Part shown: positions 3,400-33,986 of the stretch, piece after piece | Position numbering within the stretch: the first letter of the stretch is position 1 | How the letters are laid out: every line of letters begins with the position of its first letter | NCBI RefSeq assembly: GCF_006345805.1 | Contig: NW_021831895.1 | Coordinates: forward strand, 1 to 37,841 | Direction of reading: 5' to 3' | DNA from: Octopus sinensis | Lineage: Eukaryota | DNA: 37,841 nucleotides | Translations under genes and position numbers: made by a program | The notes under the pieces: model-generated | The model's input: only the letters and a program-made list of their open reading frames with translations | The model's database searches: none | What the model was told of the DNA's origin: nothing

Positions 3400-3880
3400 T
3401 GTTAAAATCTTTTTTATTTGTTTTACGTTTTTCTTCTTCCCTTTTTCTTTTTGTTCCTTTCTTTTACATTTTTTGTTTCTATTTTTTTTTCACTGTTTTT
3501 CTAATGTATTTTTTCTTTTTACCTATTCTTTGTTTTTCCTTGTTTCTCTTTTTCTTTGTTTTTTTCCTTTATTTATTTTCCTTTTTATGTTTTTGCTTTA
3601 CTTCATTTCTTTTTTATTTTTTCTTTCTTAATGGTTTTTTTTTCCTTTATCGTTGTTTTTTATTTGTTTTATTTTTGCTTTGCTTTTTTTTCATTGATTT
3701 TCTTTTTATTTGTTTTTTTTTGTTGTTTATATTTGTTTCTCTTCTTTGTTTTATTTTTGTGTTTTATCTTGTTTTGCTTTTCTTTTTGTCTCATTTTAGT
3801 CTTCCTTTTCATTTGTTCTCTTCTGTCTTTTCCTTTCCTCTTTGTTCTTCTTTTCGGTTTTTATCTATTTTCCTTCTCAT
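3400..3880. repeat. T-rich low-complexity block
   Basis: Composition; partly reverse-complementary to 4920-5520. Confidence 0.9.
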
Positions 3881-3910
3881 TTCCCTGGCAATGTTACAGA
3901 GTTGCCTTAC

Positions 3911-4073
3911 CTGTTCGGGACAAACTCGTTCGGTATTGTTCTTCAGCTACGCCAACTTTTCCAAGATGCGGCCAGGACAATGAAGAAGGTTAGTGTGGAA
4001 GACAAGAGTGAAAGAGATTGTGACAGGGACTTTCAACTCCACCCTTGGATCGGTGAACTTTTACCTTTTCCAT
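3911..4073 (-). other. Candidate exon, coding status unclear
   Basis: Minus acceptor TTATTTTGTTTTTTTAG|ATGGAA and donor GAACAG|GTAAGG; all three frames contain a stop, so UTR/non-coding if real. Confidence 0.35.
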
Positions 4074-4532
4074 CTAAAAAAACAAAATAAGGATGGAGAA
4101 GAGATGCCTGTCGAACGGAATATTTCAGAAACGATGGATGACTGTAGCAAGAATGCTGAGAGTAAATGAACCTGTTTGAGCGAGAAATCAAAGAGTTTAC
4201 CAAGGGATTCGTTGTTGGAATGTGGTTTGTGGGGTCGGCCACGTGCCTCACTTCATAAATATTTTCTTTCATTCATTTTTTTCATCCGAATTTTATACTT
4301 ATTTATCATCCATTATGTGTTCCATTTGAATCCCGACCCCCTTCTCAGTCCTTGTATCGTCCACTCTATTTTTTTGACCTTCATGGTTAATAAATTTGCA
4401 TTTTTTGTCATATGGTTGCTTAGGAGAGAAAAAACGAAAACAAATAACAAAGAAAGCAAGAAATAAAAACAAAAAAAATGAAAAACAAAAAGAAAAACAT
4501 GAGAAAACAAACAAGCAAAAAGCAAAATATAA

Positions 4533-4715
4533 GAAAGAGATATGAAACAAAACTGTCCAATTACATCAGGAAGTTGAAAGAGCGTGCTACTGTATTAAAT
4601 ATCGATTGAAAGCTTCTTGAAAGTAGTTACTACACAGAGATAGCACAGAAAATTGAAGGTTATGCATAGCTATAAAGGAGGTTATGTATAGTTTTACTCT
4701 GCGATCTCAAAAGAT
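4533..4715 (+). pseudogene. Degenerate Penelope-like element GIY-YIG endonuclease C-terminal fragment
   Basis: Reads RKRYETKLSNYIRKLKERATVLNID*KLLE, then YKGG and LCDL in shifted frames, resembling the T.LS.YIW.LK...I.W.I...C.LC region of PLE endonucleases (recalled motif). Confidence 0.5.
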
Positions 4716-4919
4716 CGGTATACTATTTATATTTTAGATCACAGGATTTCATAGAATGTCGCCACTTTGATAAACATCTTCTGAGACAGAAATATGTTGT
4801 CACTAACTGACTTTATTTCGATGATTTTTACTCTCAATGAGATAATCCTGATCTATATAGACTCTGTAATTTATAACCTGAATCCCAAGTCAATAAACTC
4901 AGTAGATCAAACAACAATA

Positions 4920-5520
4920 GTCACATTGATATTTTCATAAATGAAAAACAACAAACGAAGAACAATAAAAGAAAAAGAAAAAAAACGAAGAGAAAAAGAA
5001 AACAACGAAAAAAGAAAAACAAAGAAAAAAGAAAATAACGAAAAAAGAACAAAGAAAGAAATCGAAGACAAACAAATAAAAAAGAAAACAGCAAACAAAT
5101 AAAAAAAGTGAAACAAATTAAAACGTAAAAAAGAAAAAAAACAAAGAAGGAAATAATAGAAAAAGAAAGAAGAAAAACAACGAAAAGAAATAAACAAAAT
5201 AAGAAAAATAAAGAAAAAAAGAAAAAGAGAAAGAAGAAAAAGAAAAACAAAGGAAGAGAAAGAAATGAAAAAGAAAACAAATTAAAAAGAAAAAAACAAA
5301 CAAAAAATAAAGAACAAAGAAAAGAACAATGAAAAGAAAATCAATGGAAAAAAGCAAAGAAAAAGAAAGATAAAGAAAAAAGAAAAAAAACAATGACGAA
5401 AGAACAACAAAAAAGAAATGAAGTAAAACAAAAACACATAAAAGGACGGTAAAACAAACAAAAAAAAACAGACGGAAAAAGAAAACAAATTATGAAAAAT
5501 AAATGATGCTTAAATACGTT
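4920..5520. repeat. A-rich low-complexity block
   Basis: Composition; explains F/L-rich minus-strand ORFs. Confidence 0.9.
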
Positions 5521-5544
5521 CATGTTATTTGAAATATATATTCT

Positions 5545-7775
5545 TTTCTACTTTTAGGCACAAGGCCCGAAATTTTTGGGGGGAAGGGATCCAGTCGATT
5601 AGATCAACACCAGTACGCAACTGGTACTTGATTTATCGACCCCGAAAGGATGAAAGGCAAAGTCGACCTCGGCGGAATTTGAACTCAGAACGTAACGGCG
5701 TACGAAATACCTGTTTCTATTTCTCTACTACCCACAAGGGGCTATACATAGAGGGGACGAACAAGGACAGACAAACGGATTAAGTCGATTATATCGACCC
5801 CAGTGTGTAACTGGTACTTGATTTATAGACCCCGAAAGGATGAAAGCCAAAGTCGACCTCGGCGGCATTTGAACTCAGAAAGTAACGGCGTACGAAATAC
5901 CTGTTTCTATTTCTCTACTACCCACAAGGGCTACACACAGAGGGGACGAACAAGGACAGACAAACGGATTAAGTCGATTATATCGACCCCAGTGTGTAAC
6001 TGGTACTTATTTAATCGACCCCGAAAGGATCAAAGGCAAAGTCGACCTCGGCGGGATTTGAACTCAGAACGTAGCGGCGTACGAAATACCTGTTTCGATT
6101 TCTTTACTACCCACAAGGGGCTAAACGCAGAGGGGACAACCAAGGACAGGCAAACGGATTAAGTCGATTACATCGACCCCAGTGTGTAACTGGTACTTAT
6201 TTAATCGACCCCGAAAGGATGAAAGGCAAAGTCGACCTCGGCGGAATTAGAACTCAGAACGTAGCGGCAGACGAAATACCTATTTCTATTTCTTTACTAC
6301 CCATAAGGGGCTAAACACAGAGGGGACAAACAGATTAAGTCAATTACATCGATCCCAGTGCGAAACTGGTACTTATTTAATCGACCCCGAAAAGATGAAA
6401 GGCAAAGTCGACTTCGGCGGAATTTGAACTCAGACCGTAGCGGCTTACGAAATACCTATTTCTATTTCTTTACTACCCACAAGGGGCTACACACAGAGGG
6501 GACGAACAAGGACAGACGAACGGATTAATTCGATTATATCGACCCCAGTGCGAAACTGGTACTTATTTAATCGACCCCGAAAGGATGAAAGGCAAAGTCG
6601 ACTTCGGCGGAATTTGAACTCAGAACGTAGCGCGTACGAAATACCTATTTCTATTTCTTTACTACCCACAAGGGGCTACATACAGAGGGGACAAAGAAGG
6701 ACAGACGAACGGATTAAGTCGATTATATCGACCCCAGTGTGTAACTGGTATTTATTTAATCGACCCCGAAAGGATGAAAGGCAAAGTCGACCTCGGTGGA
6801 ATTTGAACTCAGAACGTAACGGCAGACGAAATACTTATTTCTTTACTACCCACAAGGGAATAAACACAGAAAGGACAAACTAACGGATTAAGTCGATTAG
6901 ATCAACACCAGTGCGTAACTGGTAGTTTATTTATCGACCCCGAAAGGATAAAAGGCAAAGTCGACCTAGGCGGAATTTGAACTCAGAACATAGCGGCGTA
7001 CGAAATATCTATTTCTATTTCTTTACTGCCCACACGGGGCAAAACACAGAGGGGACAAACGGATTAAGTCAATGACATCGACCCCAGTGCGAAACTGGTA
7101 CTTATTTAATCGACCCCGAAAGGATGACCGGCAAAGTCGACCTCGGTGAAATTTGGACTCAGAACGTAGCGGCAGACGAAATACCTATTTCTCTACTACC
7201 CACAAGGGGCTAAACACAAAGGGGACGAACAAGGACAGACAAACGGATTAAGTCGATTACATCGACTCCAGTGCGTACCTGGTACTTATTTAATCGACCC
7301 CGAAAGGATGAAAAGCAACGTCGACCTCGGCGGAATTTGAACTCAGAACGTAGCGGCAGACGGAATACCTATTTCTTTACTACCCACAAGGGGATAAACA
7401 CAGAAAGGACAAACTAACGGATTAAGTCGATTAGATCAACCCCAGTGTGTAACTGGTACTTTATTTATCGACCCCGAAAGGATAAAAGGCAAAGTCGACC
7501 TAGGCGGAATTTGAACTCAGAACGTAGCGGCAGACGAAATACCTATTTCTCTACGACCCACAAGGGGCTAAACACAGAGGGGACGAACAAAGACAGACAA
7601 ACGGATTAAGTCGATTACATCGACTGCAGTTCGTAACTGGTACTTATTTAATCGACCCCGAAAGGATCAAAGGCAAGGTCGACCTCGGCGGAATTTGAAC
7701 TCACAACGTAACGACAGACGAAATACCGCTGGGCATTCCGCACGGCGTGCTAACGATTCTGCCGGCTCGCCGCCT
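5545..7775 (-). mobile_element. Tandem array of 12 SINE bodies (~175-190 bp units) with a single tRNA-like head
   Basis: Marker CCCGAAAGGAT (one copy CCCGAAAAGAT) recurs at ~5641, 5831, 6020, 6210, 6386, 6576, 6765, 6939, 7115, 7299, 7473, 7657; head only at ~7725-7775. Central motif GCCTTTCATCCTTTCGGGGTCGAT resembles a Meta-type SINE domain (recalled, unverified). Confidence 0.95.
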
Positions 7776-7920
7776 CAATGTATTTTCTTGTCTTCGCCTG
7801 ATACCTAGTATTGCTTTGTTTGCGTCCGTGCGGTCAGCAAAAGAACGACCAGGTCTTTGAAACTTAAATGAGCTTCAGTAAACCCTTCCAGGCGATGCTG
7901 GAAATATCAGTTATTTTGTT

Positions 7921-8481
7921 GGATCTCTTCCGGTTTGAACGGCAGTTTTTTCTAGCGGTGTCATATGAAATTGTCACCCATAATTATGACCCTAGTATCG
8001 ATCTATTGCATTTCAATCTGTTTTAGGGTTAGGGGTGGGGGGAAGGCTATCTTTTTTTCTTCAGAAATGTAAATAAACCCAATCTGTTTCTTAAACGAGG
8101 GACATATTCATACGGCACAGAATGTTTTCACCTCAATAGACGTCATTGATTGGTTGAAGTTGCAGAAATTGAAGATAAAAAAACCAACAAATATTTTACA
8201 AACTATAGAATTTTCTCAATAAAGCCAAGAGAAAAAGATGTTTTATAAACACATCCTACCAGTATACGAAGTTTAAAAGTGTTTAGTTACCTAGAAATTA
8301 TGTTAAAAACTGCCGTTCAAACCGAAAAGATCCCAAATATCTTACAAACTATAGAATGTTCTCAATAAAGCCAAGAGAAAAAGATGTTTTATAAACACAT
8401 CCTACCAGTATACGAAGTTTAAAAGTGTTTAGTTCGGTGGAAATTATTAAAAAAAAACTACCGGCCAAACCGAAAAGATCC
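7921..8481. mobile_element. TIR MITE (GGATC...GATCC family), monomer 7921-8333 plus partial duplication 8334-8481
   Basis: Starts GGATCTCTTCCGGTTTGAACGGCAG, ends CTGCCGTTCAAACCGAAAAGATCC; no clean TSD. Confidence 0.85.
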
Positions 8482-8660
8482 CCTATTTTATTTTGCAACT
8501 ATTGTGCTAATATCGTTGAAAAGATTTTGAGGAAAGTTTTGAAGGGAGACAATTAACAATACTAAATTTTACAACTTCTGTTTTTATTATTTCCCTTTAA
8601 TTGCTAATTGGTTTTACAACAAATATTTCATATTTTATTTCGTTTTTCTATGTGGTTTAT

Positions 8661-8950
8661 GCACTGGGGTCGACTTGATCCCTTTGTTTGTCCCCTCTAA
8701 GTTTAGCCCCTTGTGGGCAGGAAAGAAATAAGAAACGTTAGCACGGCCGGCAAAATGTTTAGCGGTAGCTTGTCTGCCGTTACGTTCTGAGTTCAAATTC
8801 AGCCGAGGTTGACTTTGCCTTTCATCCTTTCGGGGTTGATAAAGTACCAGTTTTGCACTGGGGTCGATCTAATCGACTTAATTCCTTTGTCTGTCTTTGT
8901 TTGTCCCCTCTAAGTTTAGCCCCTTGTGGGCAATAAAGAAACAAGAAATA
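8661..8950 (+). mobile_element. SINE fragments of the array family (3' fragment plus near-complete copy)
   Basis: Shared body and CCCCTTGTGGG..AAGAAATA tail. Confidence 0.85.
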
Positions 8951-8964
8951 AAAATTTCTCATAA

Positions 8965-9183
8965 TATTCTTTTCTACTCTAGGCAAAAGGCCTGAAATTT
9001 TTGGGGAAGGGTGCCAGTCAATTTGATCGACCCCAGTATGCAACTGGTACTTAATTTATCAACCCCGAAAGGAATAAAGACAAAGTCGACCTCGGCGGAA
9101 TTTGAACTCAGAACGTAAAGACAGATGAAACACTGCTAAGCATTTCTCCTGGCGTGCTAATGTTTCTGCCAGCTCACTGCCTT
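8965..9183 (-). mobile_element. SINE, alternative-tail subfamily (same tail as the first unit at 5545)
   Basis: Tail TTTTCTACTCTAGGCAAAAGGCCTGAAATTTTGGGG; CATAATATT occurs near both ends (possible TSD). Confidence 0.85.
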
Positions 9184-9289
9184 AAAGCTTTCCCATAATA
9201 TTTCAACTGGTGTTCTGTTTTGACTTTTGTATTGTTCCCTCTTTTCAGTATCAGCAAGTGTTTTTCTAATTTATTATAAATAGTTATAT

Positions 9290-9890
9290 CAAAATCAAAT
9301 CAAATCAAATCAAAAAAAGAAAAAATCAAATCAAACCAAATCAAAATAGATGAACATCAATGGAATTTGTATCCTTGTGGTACCAGTGCCGGTGGCACAT
9401 AAGAAAACCATCCGAACGTGACCGTAGCCAGTACGGCATCGACTGGCCTCCGTGCTGTGGGCACGTAACTAACACCATCCGATCGTGGCCGTTCGCCAGC
9501 CTCGTCTGGCACCTGTGTCGGTGGCACATAAGAAAACACCATCCGAGCGTGGCCGTCTGCCAGCCTCGTCTGGCACCTGTGTCGGTGGCACATAAAAAAC
9601 ACCATCCGAGCGTGGCCGTCTGCCAGCCTCATCTGGCACCTGTGTCGGTGGTACATAAAAAACACTATTCGAGCATGGCCATCTGCCAGCCTCGTCTGGC
9701 ACCTGTGTCGGTGGCACATAAAATCACCCACTACACTCTCGGAGTGGTTGGCGTTAGGAAGGGCATCCAGCTGTAGAAACACTGCCAGATCTGACTGGCC
9801 TGGTGCAGCCTTCGGGCTTGCCAGACCCCAGTTGAACCATCCAACCCATGCTAGCATGGAAAGCGGACGTTAAACGATGATGATGATGAT
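9290..9890 (+). mobile_element. Non-autonomous retroposon-like repeat, (AAATC)n start and (GAT)n tail
   Basis: 3' region GGCGTTAGGAAGGGCATCCAGCTG...AACCCATGCTAGCATGGA; inverted relative at 26997-27297 and degenerate tail at ~23510-23630. Confidence 0.8.
9473..9722 (+). repeat. Minisatellite, four 63-64 bp GC-rich units
   Basis: Units start at 9473, 9537, 9600, 9663 (CACCATCCGAGCGTGGCC...GGTGGCACATAAAAAA). Confidence 0.95.
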
Positions 9891-11438: not shown

Positions 11439-11685
11439 TTTTATTTGCGTTGATATAAATCCTATCAAATTTAATTTTACACACCACTTTTATCATCTCC
11501 CACAGCAGACAAAAATTAATGGAAACAAACAGTTTTACGTAGACAATGAGCTGCAGGGACAAACTGTTTGGTATGATAAAGAGAGCAGAAAATGAGAGAG
11601 AGTTTTGATCTTGTTCTGCTTCTCTTCAATTAAAAAATACTCTTTTTTTACATTTTGAAAAACAACTGAAATTATTGTACTTATA

Positions 11686-11850
11686 GGTGCATGAATGGCT
11701 GTGTGGTAAGTAGCTTGCTAACCAACCACATGGTTCCAGGTTCAGTCCCACTGCGTGGCATCTTGGGCAAGTGTCTTCTACTATAGCCTCGGGCCGACCA
11801 AAGCCTTATGAGTGGATTTGGTAGACGGAAACTGAAAGAAGCCCGTCGTA
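11686..11850 (+). mobile_element. OR2-like SINE, 5' half
   Basis: Matches 2261-2430; ends in the internal (TA)n. Confidence 0.88.
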
Positions 11851-11866
11851 TATATATATATATATA

Positions 11867-12029
11867 GGCGCAGGAGTGGCTGTGTGGTAAGTAGCTTGTT
11901 TATCAGCCACATGGTTCCGGGTTCAGTCCCACTGCATGGCATCTTGGGCAAGTGTCTTCTGCTATAGCCTCGGGCTGACCAAAGCCTTGTGAGTGGATTT
12001 GGTAGACGGAAACTGAAAGAAGCCTGTCG

Positions 12030-12061
<32 letters not shown>

Positions 12062-21884: not shown

Positions 21885-22615
21885 TTAACCCTTTTGTTAC
21901 CGTATTTATTTTGAGATGCTCTGTGATTCTTTCAATTCCTTTAAATATAACAAAGAATTTAGTAAAATAACTTCGTTATCATTAAGCTCGTGTTAGGAAC
22001 ATAAATTGTGACTAAAATTTGGTGGAAGATTTTAATTCAAAATTTATGAAAACAAGACATTTGTACTACAGAGCCAGAGGTGGTTTCAACCAGGTTGGTA
22101 TCGAAAGAGTTAAGAATTGTTTCTCTATTATATTTTAACCCTTTCGTTACCATATTTATTTTGAGATGCTCTGTGATTCTCTCAATTATTTTAGATGTAA
22201 CAAAGAATTTAGTAAAATAACTTCGTTATCATTAAGCTCGGGTTAGGGAACATAAATTGTGACTAAAGTTTGGTGGAAGATTTTAATTCAAAATTTATGA
22301 AAACAAGACATTTGTACTACAGAGCCAGAGGTGGTTTCAACCAGGTTGGTATCGAAAGAGTTAAGAATTGTTTCTCTATTATATTTTAACCCTCTTGTTA
22401 CCATACTTCTGTTGAGATGCTCTGTGTTTCTTTCAATTAATTTTAAATCTAACAAAGAATTTAGTAAAATATCTTAGTTATAATTCAGCTAGTGTTAGGA
22501 ACATAAATTGTGACTAAAGTTTGGTGGAAGATTTTAATTCAAAATTTATGAAAACAAGACATTTGTACTACAGAGCCAGAGCCGGTTCCAGCCGGTTTGG
22601 TAACGAAAGGGTTAA
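21885..22615. mobile_element. Three tandem piggyBac-type MITEs (21889-22109, 22139-22360, 22390-22611)
   Basis: Each is bounded by TTAA; TIR consensus CCCTTTCGTTACC / GGTAACGAAAGGG; identical 21-bp spacer between copies. Confidence 0.92.
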
Positions 22616-23684
22616 AACGATTCTGAAGGCAGATAAAAATACAATAGAATAAAAAGATTTTTGTTATTGTTTAGTCACCCAGTAGACTTAGAATCAAAGG
22701 GTTATTCCCCTTCATAATTGATCATTTTCTACCTTCATTTTGAAGAAATTGAAAAATTTAAATTTCCCATTTGCACAGGAGAAATTTGTTCACAAATTTG
22801 TTGCTTATGTACCCTGACTCAGTATAATACTATGTTCTAGTTCGGCCAATATGCTTGCAGAAAACCATAATACTTTTGAAGATGGCCTTTTCATTGGGGA
22901 AGCTAATGTATATATGTATGTGTTTACAGTTATCAACAAATATGGGACGGGTAAGAACTATTTCAGCTTCTAAATTACTTGATTTGTAGCCATGATAATG
23001 AGTTGCCAATATTGGTGTATCAGATATCAAAACATTGAGCAATCTTTCGGCTACCAGCGTAAAGTAACTTTTTGGCACACCAAACCTATTTCGTTACAAA
23101 AATTAACTCCAAAACAAGGTTTTGTCGCACAATTTTTAGGTCATTTTGGGGGCAAGCTACCTTTGTACATGTTTTTGGTGTCAAATATTTCAGCATTGTT
23201 CATCCCAAAATGACCGAAAAACATGTTTATAAAGGAGAATTGTTTGCTTCACACTCCTCGTGTGCTGATTTTGCTCATAAGAAAGGAACAAATAATACAA
23301 TGTGGCTGTGGGTCATAACTTCTGGGCAACGCCAGGATGTATTGCTAATATATATTTGTGTGTGTGTGTGTGTGTTAGCCTTATCTTGACATCACATGAT
23401 GAGTGTAAATGAGTGCTGTTGTCATACAAGTGATTTCGTTCATTTCCAGCCTTCAATGCAAAACATGTCTAGTCATGGGAAAATACTGCCCTATTTTGAA
23501 ACAAGTACAGGTCGGTGACTGGAAGGGTATCCAATGCGTAGAAGAAACTCTGCCTCCACAAATAACTTCTAACCCATGCAAGCATAGAAAAGTGGACGTT
23601 AAATGATGATGAAGAGAATGATAATGATGAGTATGATGAGGATGATTTGGATGACAATAGCTTATGGGGACAATGTGAAATTAC

Positions 23685-23845
23685 CTCATCTGATGATTGG
23701 TCAGTGAAGGTACATTCTCGACATCGTTTCCAACTTATTAGGCAGGACATTCTCTTTGGAGAGTCATGGACCCCAGGAAAATCAAAGACCTTTATCAAAG
23801 GACCTGGTGAATGACAAATAGGTGAGCGCTGACAGTCCACAGCAT
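23685..23845 (-). CDS. Probable internal coding exon (xAVDCQRSPICHSPGPLIKVFDFPGVHDSPKRMSCLISWKRCRECTFTDQSSDE)
   Basis: Acceptor CTGTTTTTTGTAG|AT, donor GAG|GTAATT; 161 nt = 2 + 53 codons, open frame. Confidence 0.6.
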
Positions 23846-26996: not shown

Positions 26997-27297
26997 TCAT
27001 CATCATCATCATCATCGTTTAACGTCCGTTCTCCATGCTAGCATGGGTTGGACGGTTCGACCGGGAATCTGGGAAGCCAGAAGGCTGCACCAGGCTCCGG
27101 TCTTATCTGGCAATGTTTCTACAGCTGGATGCCCTTCCTAACGCCAACCACTCCGTGAATGTAGTGGGTGCTTTTTACGTGCCACCTGCACAGGTGCCAG
27201 GCGAGGCTGGCAACGGCCACGGTCGGATTGGTGTATTTTATGTGCCACCGGCACGGAAGCCAGCCGAGGCGGTGCTGGCATCGGCCATGAGTCGGAT
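26997..27297 (-). mobile_element. Copy of the 9290-9890 retroposon-like family (3' part)
   Basis: (CAT)n then CGTTTAACGTCCGTTCTCCATGCTAGCATGGGTT...CTGGATGCCCTTCCTAACGCCAAC. Confidence 0.85.
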
Positions 27298-27474
27298 AGT
27301 GCTTCTATTCCTTAAACCTCTCACCATTCCACACACTTCTTTGATATTTCTAGTTGCAGATAATAGTTTTTCACTACTTAGCACAACATATTGTGCTACT
27401 GAACATGCCACTGCCTCTTTTTTTGTAAACAGGGCCTGTTCCTATTAGTTTTACATGCAGGTATGGCTGTGAGG

Positions 27475-28126
27475 AAGGCGCCAAGCTGGCAAAGGTGGCG
27501 AGCTAGTTAAGGCGGTGAGCTGGTTAAGGCAGCGAGCTGGCAGAAACGTTAGCACACTGGACGGAATACTTAGCGGTATTTCGCCCGTCGCTGTGTTCTG
27601 AGTTCAAATTCCGCCGAAGTCGACTTTGCCTTTCATCCTTTCAGGGTCGATAAATTAAGTACCAGTTACGCATTTGGGTTGATGTAATCGACTTAATCCG
27701 TTTGTCTGTCCTTGTTTGTCCCCTCTGTGTTTAGCCCCTTGTGGGCAGTAAAGAAATAGGTATTTCACCCGTCGATGTGTTCTGAGTTCAAATTCCACCG
27801 AGGTCGACTTTGCCTTTCATCCGTTCGGGGTCGATAAATTAAGTGCCAGTTACGCATTTGGGTCAATGTAATCGACTTAATCCGTTTGTCTGTCCTTGTT
27901 TGTCCCCTCTGTGTTTAGCCCCTTGTGGGCAGTAAAGAAATAGGTATTTCGCCCGTCGATGTGTTCTGAGTTCAAATTCCGCCGAGGTTGACTTTGTCAT
28001 GCATCCTTTCGGGGTCGATAAATTAAGTACCAGTTATGCATGTGGGTCAATGTAATTGACTTAATCCGTTTGTCTGTCCTTCTTTGTCCTCTCTGTTTTT
28101 AGCCCCTTGTGGGCAGTAAAGAAATA
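27475..28126 (+). mobile_element. SINE trimer (184-bp period) flanked by a 15-bp TSD
   Basis: GGTAT at 27575, 27759, 27943, 28127; TSD GGTATGGCTGTGAGG at 27460-27474 and 28127-28141. Confidence 0.95.
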
Positions 28127-28295
28127 GGTATGGCTGTGAGGTTAAGAAAATTGTTTTGCAATCATGTGATTTCAGGTTCATTCTCATTCTGTGGCACCTT
28201 GGGCAAGTGTCTTCTATTATAGCGCCTTGCAAACCAATACCATTGTCCGCAAATTTGGTAGAAGGAGACTGAGTGGAAGCCCATAAGTATGTAGG
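28127..28295 (+). mobile_element. Old OR2-like SINE that hosts the trimer insertion
   Basis: Contains GGCACCTTGGGCAAGTGTCTTCTA; its first bases lie at ~27455-27474. Confidence 0.75.
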
Positions 28296-29714: not shown

Positions 29715-30140
29715 AAGGTGGCGAGTTGGCAGAAATGTTAGCACGCCGGGCGAAATGCTTAGCGGTATTTCGTCTGCCGTTACGTTCTGAGTTCAAATTC
29801 CACCGAGGTCGAATTTGCCTTTCATCCTTTCAGGGTCGATAAATTAAATACCAGTTTTGCACTGGGGTCGGTATAATCAACTTAATCCATTTGTCTGTCC
29901 TTGTTTTGTCCCCTCTGTGTGTAGCCCCTTGTGGGCAGTAAAGAAATAGGTATTTTCGCCTGTTGCTACGTTCTGAGTTCAAATTCCACCGAGGTCGACT
30001 TTGCCTTTCATCCTTTCAGGGTCGATAAATTAAGTACCAGTTTTGCACTGGGGTTGGTATAATCGACTTAATCCATATGTCTGCCCTTGTTTTGTCCCCT
30101 CTGTGTGTAGCCCCTTGTGGGCAGTAAAGAAATAAGAAAT
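29715..30140 (+). mobile_element. SINE dimer (185-bp period)
   Basis: One head; junction GAAATA|GGTATTTTCG at 29949; internal GGTAT at 29764. Confidence 0.92.
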
Positions 30141-30400
30141 AAGCAGGGTGAGCAACCTTAATTAGAAATGCACTGAGAAAAAGCCAACCTTGAAAGGTGA
30201 AGCAGAAGTGCCACCGCTGTCCCTTTCCCCAGCCCCTATTTGGTCAGGTGGCAGTATGTGTTCTTGCACTTGCTGTGCAAAGTATGCATTCCATTGGTCA
30301 GTTGGGCCACTGGTTACTAGTGCCCCCACGAAGGCAAACTCAGCAAACACACATGGAGGCTGCACCACTTTCAGATGTTTTCTGGATGGTATGGCCTCCC

Positions 30401-30459
30401 GTTTGTCTGTCCTTGTTTGTCCCCTCTGTGTTTATCCCCTTGTGGGTAGTAAAGAAATA
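30401..30459 (+). mobile_element. 59-bp 5'-truncated SINE with 13-bp TSD
   Basis: TSD GGTATGGCCTCCC at 30388-30400 and 30460-30472. Confidence 0.92.
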
Positions 30460-30824
30460 GGTATGGCCTCCCTTTGTGACACACATTTTTTTCTGCAGCT
30501 CTTCACATTGACAAAGCTGCACTCCTGGATCCCAAAATGTGTCAAGATTGTAAGTTTTAGCAATATATAGGGAACTAGGGGTGAGTATAGTAGGGTTTAG
30601 ATACTCTCGAGAAAATTACTGGTACCAATATGAACAAAGTAAATAGTTTGTTTGAGAGGACTTTCATGCTAGGCTGGTGGGGAGATCCCTACAGATAAAT
30701 TGCAGGAATCTCTGGCCTGGCAGTGCAACCAAGGAGCATGTCTGGGTCAAGAGGGTCAGTGTAGATATGAAAGGGCTACCAAGCAAGACTGTCAGAGATC
30801 TGTGCAGAGTAAAGAAACAGTCCT

Positions 30825-32931: not shown

Positions 32932-33094
32932 TTATTTAAAAGCAGCAGAAAATTCAACAACACCTGTTACTCCGAATTTCACGTTTCCGTTCGTCGGACA
33001 GTTTTTTTTCTATTCTAGCAAAAACTGTCCGACGAACAGAAACGTGAAACTCAGAGTAATAGGTTTTGTTGAATTTTCTGCTGCTTTTAAATAA
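32932..33094. repeat. Palindrome of two inverted Penelope-like termini, each with a CCGACGA hammerhead-like motif (32964-33001 minus, 33025-33062 plus)
   Basis: ~75-bp arms TTATTTAAAAGCAGCAGAAAATTCAAC... and ...GTTGAATTTTCTGCTGCTTTTAAATAA; same family as 25312-25420. Confidence 0.88.
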
Positions 33095-33824: not shown

Positions 33825-33986
33825 CCTGAAGAATTAAAATTAATCAGGGGAAATAATAGGTATGCCTACCTGCTGGAAGTAACAGTCAAAACTCTATTTA
33901 TTCAGCAATTTAAATAAGAGTTTTGACTGCTATTTCCAGCAGGTAGACATACTTAGTATGTCCTTTGATTAATTTTAATCTTCAGC
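33825..33986. mobile_element. 162-bp palindromic MITE-like element flanked by TA (Tc1/mariner-type inference)
   Basis: ~70-bp arms CTGAAG(A)ATTAAAATTAATCA...CTACCTGCTGGAA...CAGTCAAAACTCT and their complement; TA at 33823-33824 and 33987-33988. Confidence 0.7.

What the first reader, a model, noticed from the sequence alone, without database searches (positions are those of the whole stretch)
5545..7775. 12-unit head-less SINE multimer built at an internal GGTAT site
On the element strand, internal junctions read tail-GAAATA|GGTATTTCG (GAAACA in the three leftmost; AGTAT and GATAT variants at ~6835 and ~7005). This is exactly where the monomer has GCGGTATTTCG just after its tRNA head. There is one head for 12 bodies. 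The terminal unit (~5545-5620) has a different subfamily tail from the other 11, and tails vary between one and two GAAATA repeats. This fits serial insertion into the family's own GGTAT site, or re-priming of reverse transcription when cDNA reaches a target mimic: a route from SINE to satellite.
Basis: partly seen in the sequence, partly recalled or inferred. Interest (0 to 1): 0.8.

Follow-up and report, generated by a model that had tools for sequence, protein, structure and literature searches.

The report
SINE-derived tandem array in octopus DNA
A short mobile element (SINE) of an octopus-type genome has been built into a 12-unit tandem array whose unit borders look exactly like the element's own insertion junctions, so the family probably inserts into itself; this is one concrete way for scattered repeats to become satellite-like repeats.

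Summary
Window 5538-7775 (element on the - strand) holds one tRNA-like head and 12 units that each start GGTATTTCG; 11 units end in a (GAAATA)1-2 tail, and the last has a different tail type.

Two more arrays in the same window have the same junction: head + 3 units at 27526-28126, and head + 2 units at 29716-30134.

Two independent insertions of the same tail (array B, and a 61-nt tail fragment at 30400-30459) have perfect 15-bp and 12-13-bp target-site duplications. Both start GGTATGGC. GGTAT occurs at 4e-4 per site in the background, so P is about 2e-6. GGTAT is therefore target DNA, not part of the tail, and each internal junction looks like a true 3' insertion junction.

Units cluster by array, there is no age gradient along the big array, and one unit is a hybrid. 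So eleven serial hits from unrelated sources are not needed.

My best reading has two stages. First, target-primed reverse transcription acts at the SINE's own GGTAT site, either as self-insertion with a hidden target duplication or as re-priming by the growing cDNA. Second, the array expands by unequal exchange.

Rivals are DNA slippage and a multimeric master copy. A genome-wide test was not possible with these tools. The closest known case is the SINE-derived satellites of squamates.

The parts
7728..7775 (-). Single tRNA-like head of array A (AGGCGGCGAGCCGGCAGAATCGTTAGCACGCCGTGCGGAATGCCCAGC); the only head in the array
   Evidence: not recognised as tRNA
5712..7727 (-). Units A01-A11 (type-1 tail). 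They start at 7727, 7543, 7369, 7185, 7009, 6835, 6645, 6456, 6280, 6090 and 5901, and are 174-190 nt long. Each runs from GGTATTTCG to (GAAATA)1-2.
5538..5711 (-). Unit A12. It starts GGTATTTCG. Its 5' half is like A10/A11; its 3' half and tail are type 2 (...AGAAAAGAATAT). It is probably the remnant of the resident element, or a recombinant.
27460..27474 (+). 5' copy of the target-site duplication of array B (GGTATGGCTGTGAGG)
   Evidence: the empty site reconstructs the 5' end of a CORE-type SINE
27475..27525 (+). Three extra tandem copies of the first 17 nt of the head, between the TSD and the head of array B
27526..28126 (+). Array B: head (27526-27574) plus units B1 27575-27758, B2 27759-27942 and B3 27943-28126. 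Same junction GAAATA|GGTATTTC.
28127..28141 (+). 3' copy of the target-site duplication of array B (GGTATGGCTGTGAGG)
29716..30134 (+). Array C: head (29716-29763) plus C1 29764-29948 and C2 29949-30134. Same junction. The 3' flank is not GGTAT (AGAAATAAGCAGG).
30388..30472 (+). Fragment F: the 5'-truncated last ~61 nt of the type-1 tail (30400-30459), flanked by the 12-13-bp TSD GGTATGGCCTCC(C) at 30388-30400 and 30460-30472
8650..8948 (+). G (5'-truncated type-1 copy, 8650-8730) abutting D (type-1 copy truncated in the head, 8731-8948). The junction GAAATA|AGAAACGTTAGC is of a different kind; D probably inserted into G's tail with an 8-bp tail-like TSD, AAGAAATA.
8964..9185 (-). E: type-2 monomer (head + body + type-2 tail); its internal site is mutated to AGTGTTTCA

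Best explanation
**What it is.** A SINE-derived tandem array in an octopod genome.

**The element.** The family (here 'type 1') has three parts:
- a 49-nt tRNA-like head;
- a body carrying a B-box-like motif;
- a roughly 66-nt tail ending in (GAAATA)n, of the kind that LINE partners with short 3' repeats recognise.

**The target (shown).** Insertions occur immediately 5' of GGTAT in the target: two clean TSDs start GGTATGGC. The SINE carries the same pentamer, GGTATTTCG, just after its head, on the 3' side of a predicted hairpin.

**Founding step (inferred).** Target-primed reverse transcription (TPRT) acts at this internal mimic. Two variants fit the data and could not be separated.
- Variant (a), self-insertion. 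The partner nicks a resident SINE 5' of GGTAT and copies a new RNA from its tail. The second nick, 12-15 bp downstream, leaves a top-strand overhang (GGTATTTCGTCTGCC). That overhang is identical to the new cDNA's own internal sequence, so it anneals there and primes second-strand synthesis. The result is one extra unit running exactly from GGTAT to the tail, with no second head and no visible TSD.
- Variant (b), re-priming. The growing cDNA reaches the internal site and ends ...ATACC-3', like a nicked target. It is then re-used as primer on the 3' end of the same or another SINE RNA.

**Later growth (inferred).** Once two or more units exist, unequal exchange, gene conversion and perhaps further events of the same kind expand and shuffle the array.

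**Function.** No cellular function is implied. The array is a by-product of a self-targeting retroelement.
For: 1. The unit's right border is the SINE's true 3' end, and its left border is the first base of GGTAT. This holds in all 11 + 2 + 1 internal junctions of three arrays.
2. The same structure, GAAATA|GGTAT, is found at two true insertion junctions with perfect TSDs. Array B has 15 bp, and its empty site reconstructs a CORE-type SINE. Fragment F has 12-13 bp. GGTAT background is 4e-4 per site, so P(>=2 of 6 flanks) is about 2e-6; both flanks also share GGTATGGC.
3. Type-2 tails never abut GGTAT (0 of 9), although type-2 copies carry the same internal GGTATTTCG. The junction therefore goes with the tail type, as expected if a partner enzyme causes it.
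4. The junction of a type-1 tail onto unit A12, which ends in a type-2 tail, cannot arise by slippage within one element.
5. Units cluster by array, so the same junction arose at least three times independently.
6. In array A the closest relatives are mostly non-adjacent (A01-A03, A02-A05, A07-A10). That fits units drawn from a few sources better than single-unit exchange alone.
7. Array B also has a 4x stutter of the 5'-terminal 17 nt of the head. This is compatible with a jump-prone reverse transcriptase.
8. Array C is a dimer although its 3' flank is not GGTAT, which argues against a need for flanking direct repeats.
Against: - The sample is tiny: one 38-kb window plus 62 kb of ungapped O. 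bimaculoides sequence. That sequence held one type-1 monomer and no array.
- The partner LINE was not found, so its nicking preference is inferred from two TSDs only.
- SINE-internal GGTAT sites would have been hit about ten times more often than the 27 other GGTAT sites of the window. So many junctions probably come from exchange or jumps, not from separate insertions.
- There is no age or CpG gradient along array A.
- A11 and A12 share their 5' halves, and B2 and B3 share variants. DNA-level exchange has therefore certainly acted.
- The cDNA end has no complementarity to the tail itself, so variant (b) needs an added assumption.
- TSDs of arrays A and C could not be identified.
Confidence: 0.5

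Rival explanations
1. Purely DNA-level origin. A monomer that happened to land at a GGTAT site is bracketed by 5-bp direct repeats: the internal GGTAT and the GGTAT of the flank. Replication slippage or illegitimate exchange between them makes the first duplication. Unequal crossing-over then does the rest.
For: Array B is flanked by GGTAT, so the direct repeat exists there. Units cluster by array, and B2+B3 are sisters. The A11/A12 hybrid and the lack of an age gradient show that exchange has acted. Unequal recombination is also what the squamate sSat paper proposes (PMC10702118).
Against: A 5-bp repeat 184 bp apart is weak. Array C has no GGTAT flank. Slippage within one element cannot produce the junction between a type-1 tail and a unit with a type-2 tail in array A. 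It also does not explain why type-2 elements, which carry the same internal site, show no such junction. Nor does it explain why GGTAT flanks are enriched in the first place.
Confidence: 0.2
2. The multimer is itself the transposing unit. Some master copies are head + n units (a SINE with an internal VNTR). Pol III reads through them, and the multimeric RNA is retrotransposed. GGTAT-starting TSDs then arise because nicked targets ending ...ATACC anneal to the GGUAU at a unit junction of the multimeric RNA. On this reading the flank bias is a consequence of the junction, not its cause.
For: The consensus unit has no T4 terminator on the element strand. The whole of array B, including head and stutter, lies inside one TSD. 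Units of B and of C are nearly star-like and share private variants. The D/G pair suggests that targets are chosen by annealing to tail-like sequence. Dimeric SINEs that transpose as dimers are known (Alu; cited in PMC10702118).
Against: The model still needs a first event that made the junction. B and F share GGTATGGC, not the junction's GGTATTTC. Units do not group by position across arrays. Array A ends in a different tail type. The present arrays A, B and C all carry T4 runs, though these may be later mutations.
Confidence: 0.2
3. Rolling-circle or other circle-based amplification. A strong-stop cDNA running from the tail to GGTAT has complementary ends (TATTTC...GAAATA). It circularises, is copied as a concatemer, and recombines into a resident SINE. 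A related idea is a retrozyme-like circular RNA.
For: The junction GAAATA-GG-TATTTC is a near-palindrome. The ends of such a cDNA could pair (sequence; folds). Homogeneous arrays B and C would fit.
Against: No hammerhead or other ribozyme model matches, even at E<=10. Array A is heterogeneous, with a foreign terminal unit. There is no direct evidence for circles.
Confidence: 0.05
4. Assembly artefact: the unit number is inflated, or the array is mis-joined.
For: Tandem repeats are error-prone in assemblies. The O. bimaculoides type-1 copy in L001 shows a gap-associated false duplication.
Against: Units differ by 5-16% and carry private indels, so they are individually placeable. There are no Ns in the window. 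Two further arrays have the same architecture.
Confidence: 0.03

Closest known systems
SINE-derived satellites (sSat) of squamate reptiles (Vassetzky, Kosushkin & Ryskov 2023, PMC10702118)
   Same: Tandem repeats of a portion of a tRNA-related SINE, with a longer terminal unit that runs to the SINE's own terminus. Many loci, repeated independent origins, unit about 150-200 bp, and alternating unit patterns.
   Different: A different phylum and SINE family. The squamate arrays reach about 1000 units and tend to be subtelomeric. No link between the repeat junction and a target-site motif was reported there; the origin was ascribed to unequal recombination or repeated insertion in general terms.
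Multimeric and dimeric SINEs made of full-length units (Alu; Dip/B1 multimers of jerboa, as cited in PMC10702118)
   Same: Head-to-tail SINE units made by the retrotransposition machinery. The octopus type-2 copies in L001 65990-66625 are of this kind.
   Different: In those cases every unit keeps its head. Here only the first unit has one, and the junction lies inside the tRNA-like region.
Non-LTR retrotransposons that insert into their own or a fixed sequence and so build head-to-tail arrays (for example Zepp of Chlorella, telomeric HeT-A/TART, and site-specific R1/Tx1-clade elements). Recalled from my own knowledge plus the review statement in PMC13295347.
   Same: Target preference plus TPRT yields tandem, often 5'-truncated copies.
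   Different: Those are autonomous LINEs with variable truncation points. Here a non-autonomous SINE has a fixed 'truncation' point that equals the target motif.
Stringent LINE/SINE pairs with short 3' tandem repeats and a slippage or annealing start of reverse transcription (UnaL2/UnaSINE, HAmo SINE/LINE2, RTE/Sauria; PMC2653535, PMC13295347)
   Same: The tail ends in 1-2 copies of a 6-nt repeat, and TSDs show a characteristic first base or motif.
   Different: The partner LINE was not identified here, and a 5-8-nt target motif is more specific than what is described for those pairs.
Penelope-like partial tandems and metazoan retrozymes (hammerhead-bearing tandem repeats); recalled from my own knowledge
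   Same: Tandem units of about 170-400 nt spread by reverse transcription.
   Different: No hammerhead motif was detected. The units have SINE anatomy and TSDs.

Membership tests
tRNA-derived SINE | 5' part derived from a tRNA, with pol III A and B boxes | tested here: inconclusive
   ARAGORN finds no tRNA and Rfam finds no match at E<=10. By eye there is a B-box-like GAGTTCAAATTCC and a weak A-box-like TGGCAGAA. The 5' GGCGGCG can pair with the CGCCG that follows the B-box.
tRNA-derived SINE | Dispersed copies flanked by target-site duplications | tested here: met
   Array B has a 15-bp TSD and its empty site was rebuilt. F has a 12-13-bp TSD. The O. bimaculoides monomer has TSD TATAAGGCCTA.
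tRNA-derived SINE | 3' tail shared with a partner LINE | not testable with these tools
   No LINE carrying the 66-nt tail occurs in the window or in L001, and no eukaryotic genome collection was searchable. The tail does end in the short repeat (GAAATA)1-2.
SINE-derived satellite (sSat sensu PMC10702118) | Head-to-tail tandem repeats of a part of a SINE | tested here: met
   12, 3 and 2 units, period 174-190.
SINE-derived satellite (sSat sensu PMC10702118) | A terminal unit extended to the SINE's own terminus | tested here: met
   One head sits at the 5' end of each of the three arrays.
SINE-derived satellite (sSat sensu PMC10702118) | Many loci, long homogenised arrays, chromosomal clustering | not testable with these tools
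   Only three loci in one window were seen. Metagenome and viral scans were empty.
Multimeric SINE transposing as a unit | The same multimer, flanked by its own TSD, at several loci | tested here: inconclusive
   Array B as a whole lies inside one TSD. However, units group by array and not by position, and no second copy of any multimer was available.
Retrozyme / hammerhead tandem repeat | Self-cleaving hammerhead motif in each unit | tested here: not met
   No Rfam ribozyme match in 7330-7800 at E<=10 or in the whole window at E<=1 among the 150 best matches listed (40 lower-scoring not shown).
Octopus OK / OR SINE families (Ohshima & Okada 1994) | Sequence identity to the published consensus | not tested
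The neighbouring ~415-bp SINE with CTTGGGCAAGT is CORE-like, as OR1/OR2 are said to be. The family studied here is not CORE-like.

The most novel reading that the evidence does not exclude
The SINE carries, just after its head, a copy of the short motif (GGTAT) at which its partner's machinery nicks or primes. The family therefore targets itself. Each hit, or each re-priming of the growing cDNA, adds exactly one headless unit with a hidden target duplication. This turns an interspersed repeat into a satellite by reverse transcription rather than by recombination. It would be a defined, testable molecular route from SINE to satellite, with 'rich-get-richer' array growth.
Probability: 0.4. Interest if true: 0.7.

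Novelty: new variant of a known kind. Interest (0 to 1): 0.5.

Why it matters
How satellites are born from transposable elements is usually explained by unspecified 'initial duplications'. Here the unit borders coincide, to the base, with the element's 3' end and with a motif that also starts two clean target-site duplications.

If that holds genome-wide, the first step is a property of the retrotransposition machinery itself. It could then be tested in three ways: by genomics (flank k-mers, junction positions, orthologous loci in Octopus species), by finding the partner LINE, and by retrotransposition assays.

It would also matter for repeat annotation. SINEs make up about 11.6% of the O. vulgaris genome (PMC13282606), and such arrays would be split between 'SINE' and 'tandem repeat' tracks.

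If the link does not hold, this is simply one more SINE-derived minisatellite.

Tried and rejected
- **tRNA and ribozyme detection.** ARAGORN found nothing. The whole-window Rfam scan gave only low-complexity miRNA noise, and the focused scan gave nothing. A retrozyme or hammerhead reading is therefore rejected.
- **More genomic copies, by DNA.** Exact-pattern scans of metagenome and viral contigs found 0 hits.
- **More genomic copies, by protein.** The antisense SINE ORF gave two O. bimaculoides proteins. A CORE-SINE peptide and a zinc-finger ORF from L001 gave nothing. One locus was fetched (L001, 76 kb, 14 kb of Ns). P0002 and two window ORFs are not on record. The HMMER scan of representatives gave 12 short SINE-antisense ORFs, none with the junction peptide. 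Most come from unnamed short Logan/ENA contigs; the only species named by a source is O. bimaculoides.
- **TSDs of arrays A and C.** No convincing repeat was found. For A only a weak match exists: AAATACAT vs AAATAACAT.
- **Age gradient along array A.** None was seen in CpG retention or non-CpG divergence.
- **Regular higher-order repeat in A.** Offsets of 3 or 4 units do not hold across neighbours. The shared 14-15-nt deletion of A04 and A08 lies between GTTTGTC direct repeats and may be recurrent.
- **Inverted self-insertions.** These would be expected if the tail annealed to the top-strand TATTTC. None was found.
- **GGTAT at 33859.** It follows GAAATAATA, but it belongs to an inverted-repeat element and is not an insertion junction.
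- **RNA folding.** The head hairpin that places the junction at its loop/3'-strand border is predicted in heads A, B and C. However, z-scores are weak (-0.9 to -2.4), so I do not lean on it.
- **Literature.** Nothing was found on octopus SINE arrays or on stretches of this sequence.
Full report
**1. What is there**

The window is AT-rich, repeat-rich eukaryotic DNA. The only named relatives of ORFs read from the array are Octopus bimaculoides proteins. A 76-kb O. bimaculoides locus (L001) carries the same SINE families. The source is therefore an octopod; the species was not determined.

TRF reports one array at 5593-7727 with period 190, 11.6 copies and 86% matches. Read on the - strand, the region 7775->5538 consists of:
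- one 48-nt head;
- 12 units that each begin GGTATTTCG, with GATAT at 7009 and AGTAT at 6835.

Eleven units end in the same roughly 66-nt tail...CCGTTTGTCTGTCCTTGTTTGTCCCCTCTGTGTTTAGCCCCTTGTGGGTAGTAAAGAAATA. That tail carries one or two GAAATA repeats, with GAAACA in the three units furthest from the head.

The last unit (A12, 5538-5711) ends in a different tail, 'type 2'. This tail is also seen in the monomer at 8964-9185(-) and in many O. bimaculoides copies.

Two qualifications:
- Neither ARAGORN nor any Rfam model recognises a tRNA, or a ribozyme, in the element.
- The B-box-like GAGTTCAAATTCC lies inside each unit, so 'head-less' really means 'lacking the first 49 nt'.

**2. The same junction recurs**

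A BLAST search of the head-proximal unit against the window finds two further arrays on the + strand with the identical architecture:
- array B: head + 3 units, 27526-28126;
- array C: head + 2 units, 29716-30134.

It also finds a 5'-truncated tail fragment (F, 30400-30459), a G/D pair at 8650-8948, and the type-2 monomer E.

In all 14 internal junctions the repeated segment runs exactly from the G of GGTAT to the last A of the tail.

**3. GGTAT is target DNA**

Array B, including its head, lies between two perfect copies of GGTATGGCTGTGAGG (27460-27474 and 28127-28141). Joining the flanks gives a continuous match to the 5' end of other CORE-type SINE copies in the window, so this is a clean insertion with a 15-bp TSD.

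Fragment F lies between two copies of GGTATGGCCTCC(C).

The six independent type-1 3' flanks available are:

| Copy | Flank after the tail |
|---|---|
| B | GGTATGGC... |
| F | GGTATGGC... |
| C | AGAAATAAGC |
| D | AAAATTTC |
| G | AGAAACG (inside D's head, or D sits in G's tail) |
| O. bimaculoides monomer (L001) | AATAATATAAGG |

Two of the six start GGTATGGC. GGTAT occurs at 4.0e-4 per site and strand in the rest of the window, and at 7.5e-4 in L001. The chance of two or more such flanks in six is about 2e-6. The further shared GGC adds roughly another factor of 100 (my estimate from base composition).

Nine type-2 tails never abut GGTAT, although type-2 copies have the same internal AGCGGTATTTCG.

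So:
- GGTAT is not part of the tail.
- It is a preferred target, or a priming microhomology, for elements with the type-1 tail.
- Every internal junction of the arrays has the same structure as a true 3' insertion junction.

A DNA-level duplication has no reason to end exactly at the retrotransposition-defined 3' end in three arrays. With about 200 possible phases, two further coincidences have a chance of about 2.5e-5. This figure is an inference, not a computed test.

**4. How the units are related**

Pairwise identities:

| Comparison | Identity |
|---|---|
| within array B | 92-95% |
| within array C | 94.6% |
| within array A (type-1 units A01-A11) | 84-95% |
| between arrays | 83-92% |

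In a neighbour-joining tree the units group by array: B 99% bootstrap, C 94%, A monophyletic but unsupported. B and C each carry about six or seven private variants shared by all their units. The junction therefore arose independently at least three times. The units of one array come either from one source or from in-place duplication.

Within array A:
- The closest pairs are mostly non-adjacent: A01-A03, A02-A05 (95.4%, sharing an 11-nt deletion) and A07-A10. A10-A11 is the adjacent exception.
- No regular higher-order period holds.
- There is no gradient of divergence or CpG loss from head to tail.
- A12 matches A10/A11 over its first ~95 columns (4-5 mismatches) and then switches to type 2. 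At GCCGTTACG it looks type 1 rather than the usual type-2 GTCTTTACG. It is a hybrid, which shows exchange or template switching within the shared body.

These data argue against eleven hits by unrelated sources in strict order. They do not decide between three possibilities: units drawn from a few source RNAs, multi-unit exchange, or both.

**5. Mechanism**

Shown:
- the exact borders;
- the identity of internal and true insertion junctions;
- the dependence on tail type;
- independent recurrence;
- signs of exchange.

Inferred: the founding event is TPRT at the SINE's own GGTAT. For self-insertion the standard model already predicts the observed product. The second nick, 12-15 bp downstream (the TSD length seen in B and F), leaves a top-strand end ...GGTATTTCGTCTGCC-3'. 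That end is identical to the incoming element's own sequence. It therefore anneals to the cDNA at that point and primes second-strand synthesis. The new copy is 'truncated' exactly at GGTAT, no head is duplicated, and the TSD is hidden in the repeat.

For re-priming, the cDNA that has just copied the internal site ends ...ATACC-3', as do the nicked targets of B and F (...GCCATACC-3'). It could then be extended on the 3' end of another RNA. This works only under one of two conditions:
- the enzyme recognises that primer end; or
- the template RNA (a pol III read-through transcript, or a multimeric RNA) carries GGUAU after its tail.

The tail itself is not complementary to that end.

Folding places the junction at the border between the loop and the 3' strand of a hairpin (GGGCGAAAUGCU-UAGC-GGUAUUUCGUCU). 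The hairpin is predicted in heads A, B and C, and the tail GAAAUA can pair with the same UAUUUC at unit junctions. The z-scores are weak, so I treat this as a lead only.

The 4x stutter of the first 17 nt of the head in array B fits a jump-prone reverse transcriptase. So do the tail-like target of D/G and the similar tail|truncated-head junction in L001 at 4420-4440. All three also have DNA-level explanations.

Later growth by unequal exchange is well supported (section 4).

**6. Rivals**

- Slippage between the internal GGTAT and a GGTAT flank, followed by unequal exchange, can explain array B. It cannot explain array C, the heterotypic junction, or the tail-type dependence.
- A multimeric master whose RNA is retrotransposed would make the GGTAT flank bias a consequence of internal priming at unit junctions. 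This is a serious alternative. It fits the single TSD around B and the absence of T4 runs in the consensus unit. It does not explain the first junction or the shared GGTATGGC.
- Circle-based amplification lacks support: no ribozyme was found, and array A is heterogeneous.
- An assembly artefact is unlikely given the private variants in every unit, but it was not tested with reads.

**7. Comparison with what is known**

SINE-derived satellites with exactly this layout were described in squamates in 2023. They are tandem partial units with one terminal unit reaching the SINE terminus, at many loci and with independent origins. Their origin was attributed in general terms to unequal recombination or repeated insertion (PMC10702118).

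Full-length SINE multimers and dimeric SINEs are also known (same paper). Target signatures of LINE/SINE pairs with short 3' repeats are documented too (PMC13295347; PMC2653535).

I found no description of octopus SINE arrays or of this sequence.

The array itself is thus a new member of a known kind. What is new is the base-exact coincidence of the repeat junction with a target motif backed by TSDs. That would make it a new variant with a defined mechanism, if confirmed genome-wide.

**8. Limits**

No eukaryotic genome collection could be searched, so the flank and junction statistics rest on one window plus one gappy locus. The partner LINE is unknown. TSDs of arrays A and C were not found. 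The tRNA origin and the family name (OK/OR or other) are untested.

**Verdict**

Confidence in the retrotransposition-coupled origin is about 0.5, and interest is 0.5.

Noticed in passing
window 27475-27542: The first 17 nt of the SINE head (AAGGCGGCGAGCTGGCA) occur four times in tandem between the 5' TSD and the head of array B. The copies differ mostly at CpG sites. This is a second kind of local tandem duplication in the same insertion.
   Followed up: partly
window 11682-12046: A CORE-type SINE (core CTTGGGCAAGTGTCTTC, about 415 bp, several copies in the window and 12 in L001) has its first ~181 bp duplicated in tandem at 92% identity. Here the duplicated part includes the head.
   Followed up: partly
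window 9378-9723; also 27035-27448 and 23469-23840: A 63-bp minisatellite (x5.4, 85%) lies inside a repeated element whose ORF starts MLAWVG.... Related copies lie just upstream of array B and at 23.5 kb. The element is absent from L001.
   Followed up: no
window 21885-22615 and 8188-8482: Two further tandem repeats with long units: 251 bp x 2.9 (92%) and 146 bp x 2 (90%). They are unrelated to the SINE.
   Followed up: no
window 32971-33055 and 33866-33947: Long near-perfect hairpins that hit miRNA models far below their gathering scores. They are probably inverted-repeat (MITE-like) elements. The second starts with GGTATGCC, but that is part of the inverted repeat.
   Followed up: partly
window 3496-3990 and 4430-5490: A T-rich and an A/G-rich low-complexity block of about 0.5-1 kb in mirror-like arrangement. 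The A-rich block abuts the 3' end of array A.
   Followed up: no
L001 65990-66625: Three full-length type-2 SINEs lie head-to-tail in O. bimaculoides, with tail|head junctions (one direct: ...AGAATAT|AAGGCGGCGAG). This is a different mode of SINE clustering from the headless arrays.
   Followed up: partly
window 5538-7727 vs 27575-28126 and 29764-30134: Units of array A keep 9-12 of the 12 consensus CpGs. Units of arrays B and C keep only 6-9, although their non-CpG divergence is similar. This suggests a different methylation history or a different source lineage.
   Followed up: partly
L001 40784-40798: The only type-1 copy in the O. bimaculoides locus contains a run of Ns flanked by a duplicated stretch of the SINE. 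This looks like an assembly artefact and is a warning for array counts in that assembly.
   Followed up: no
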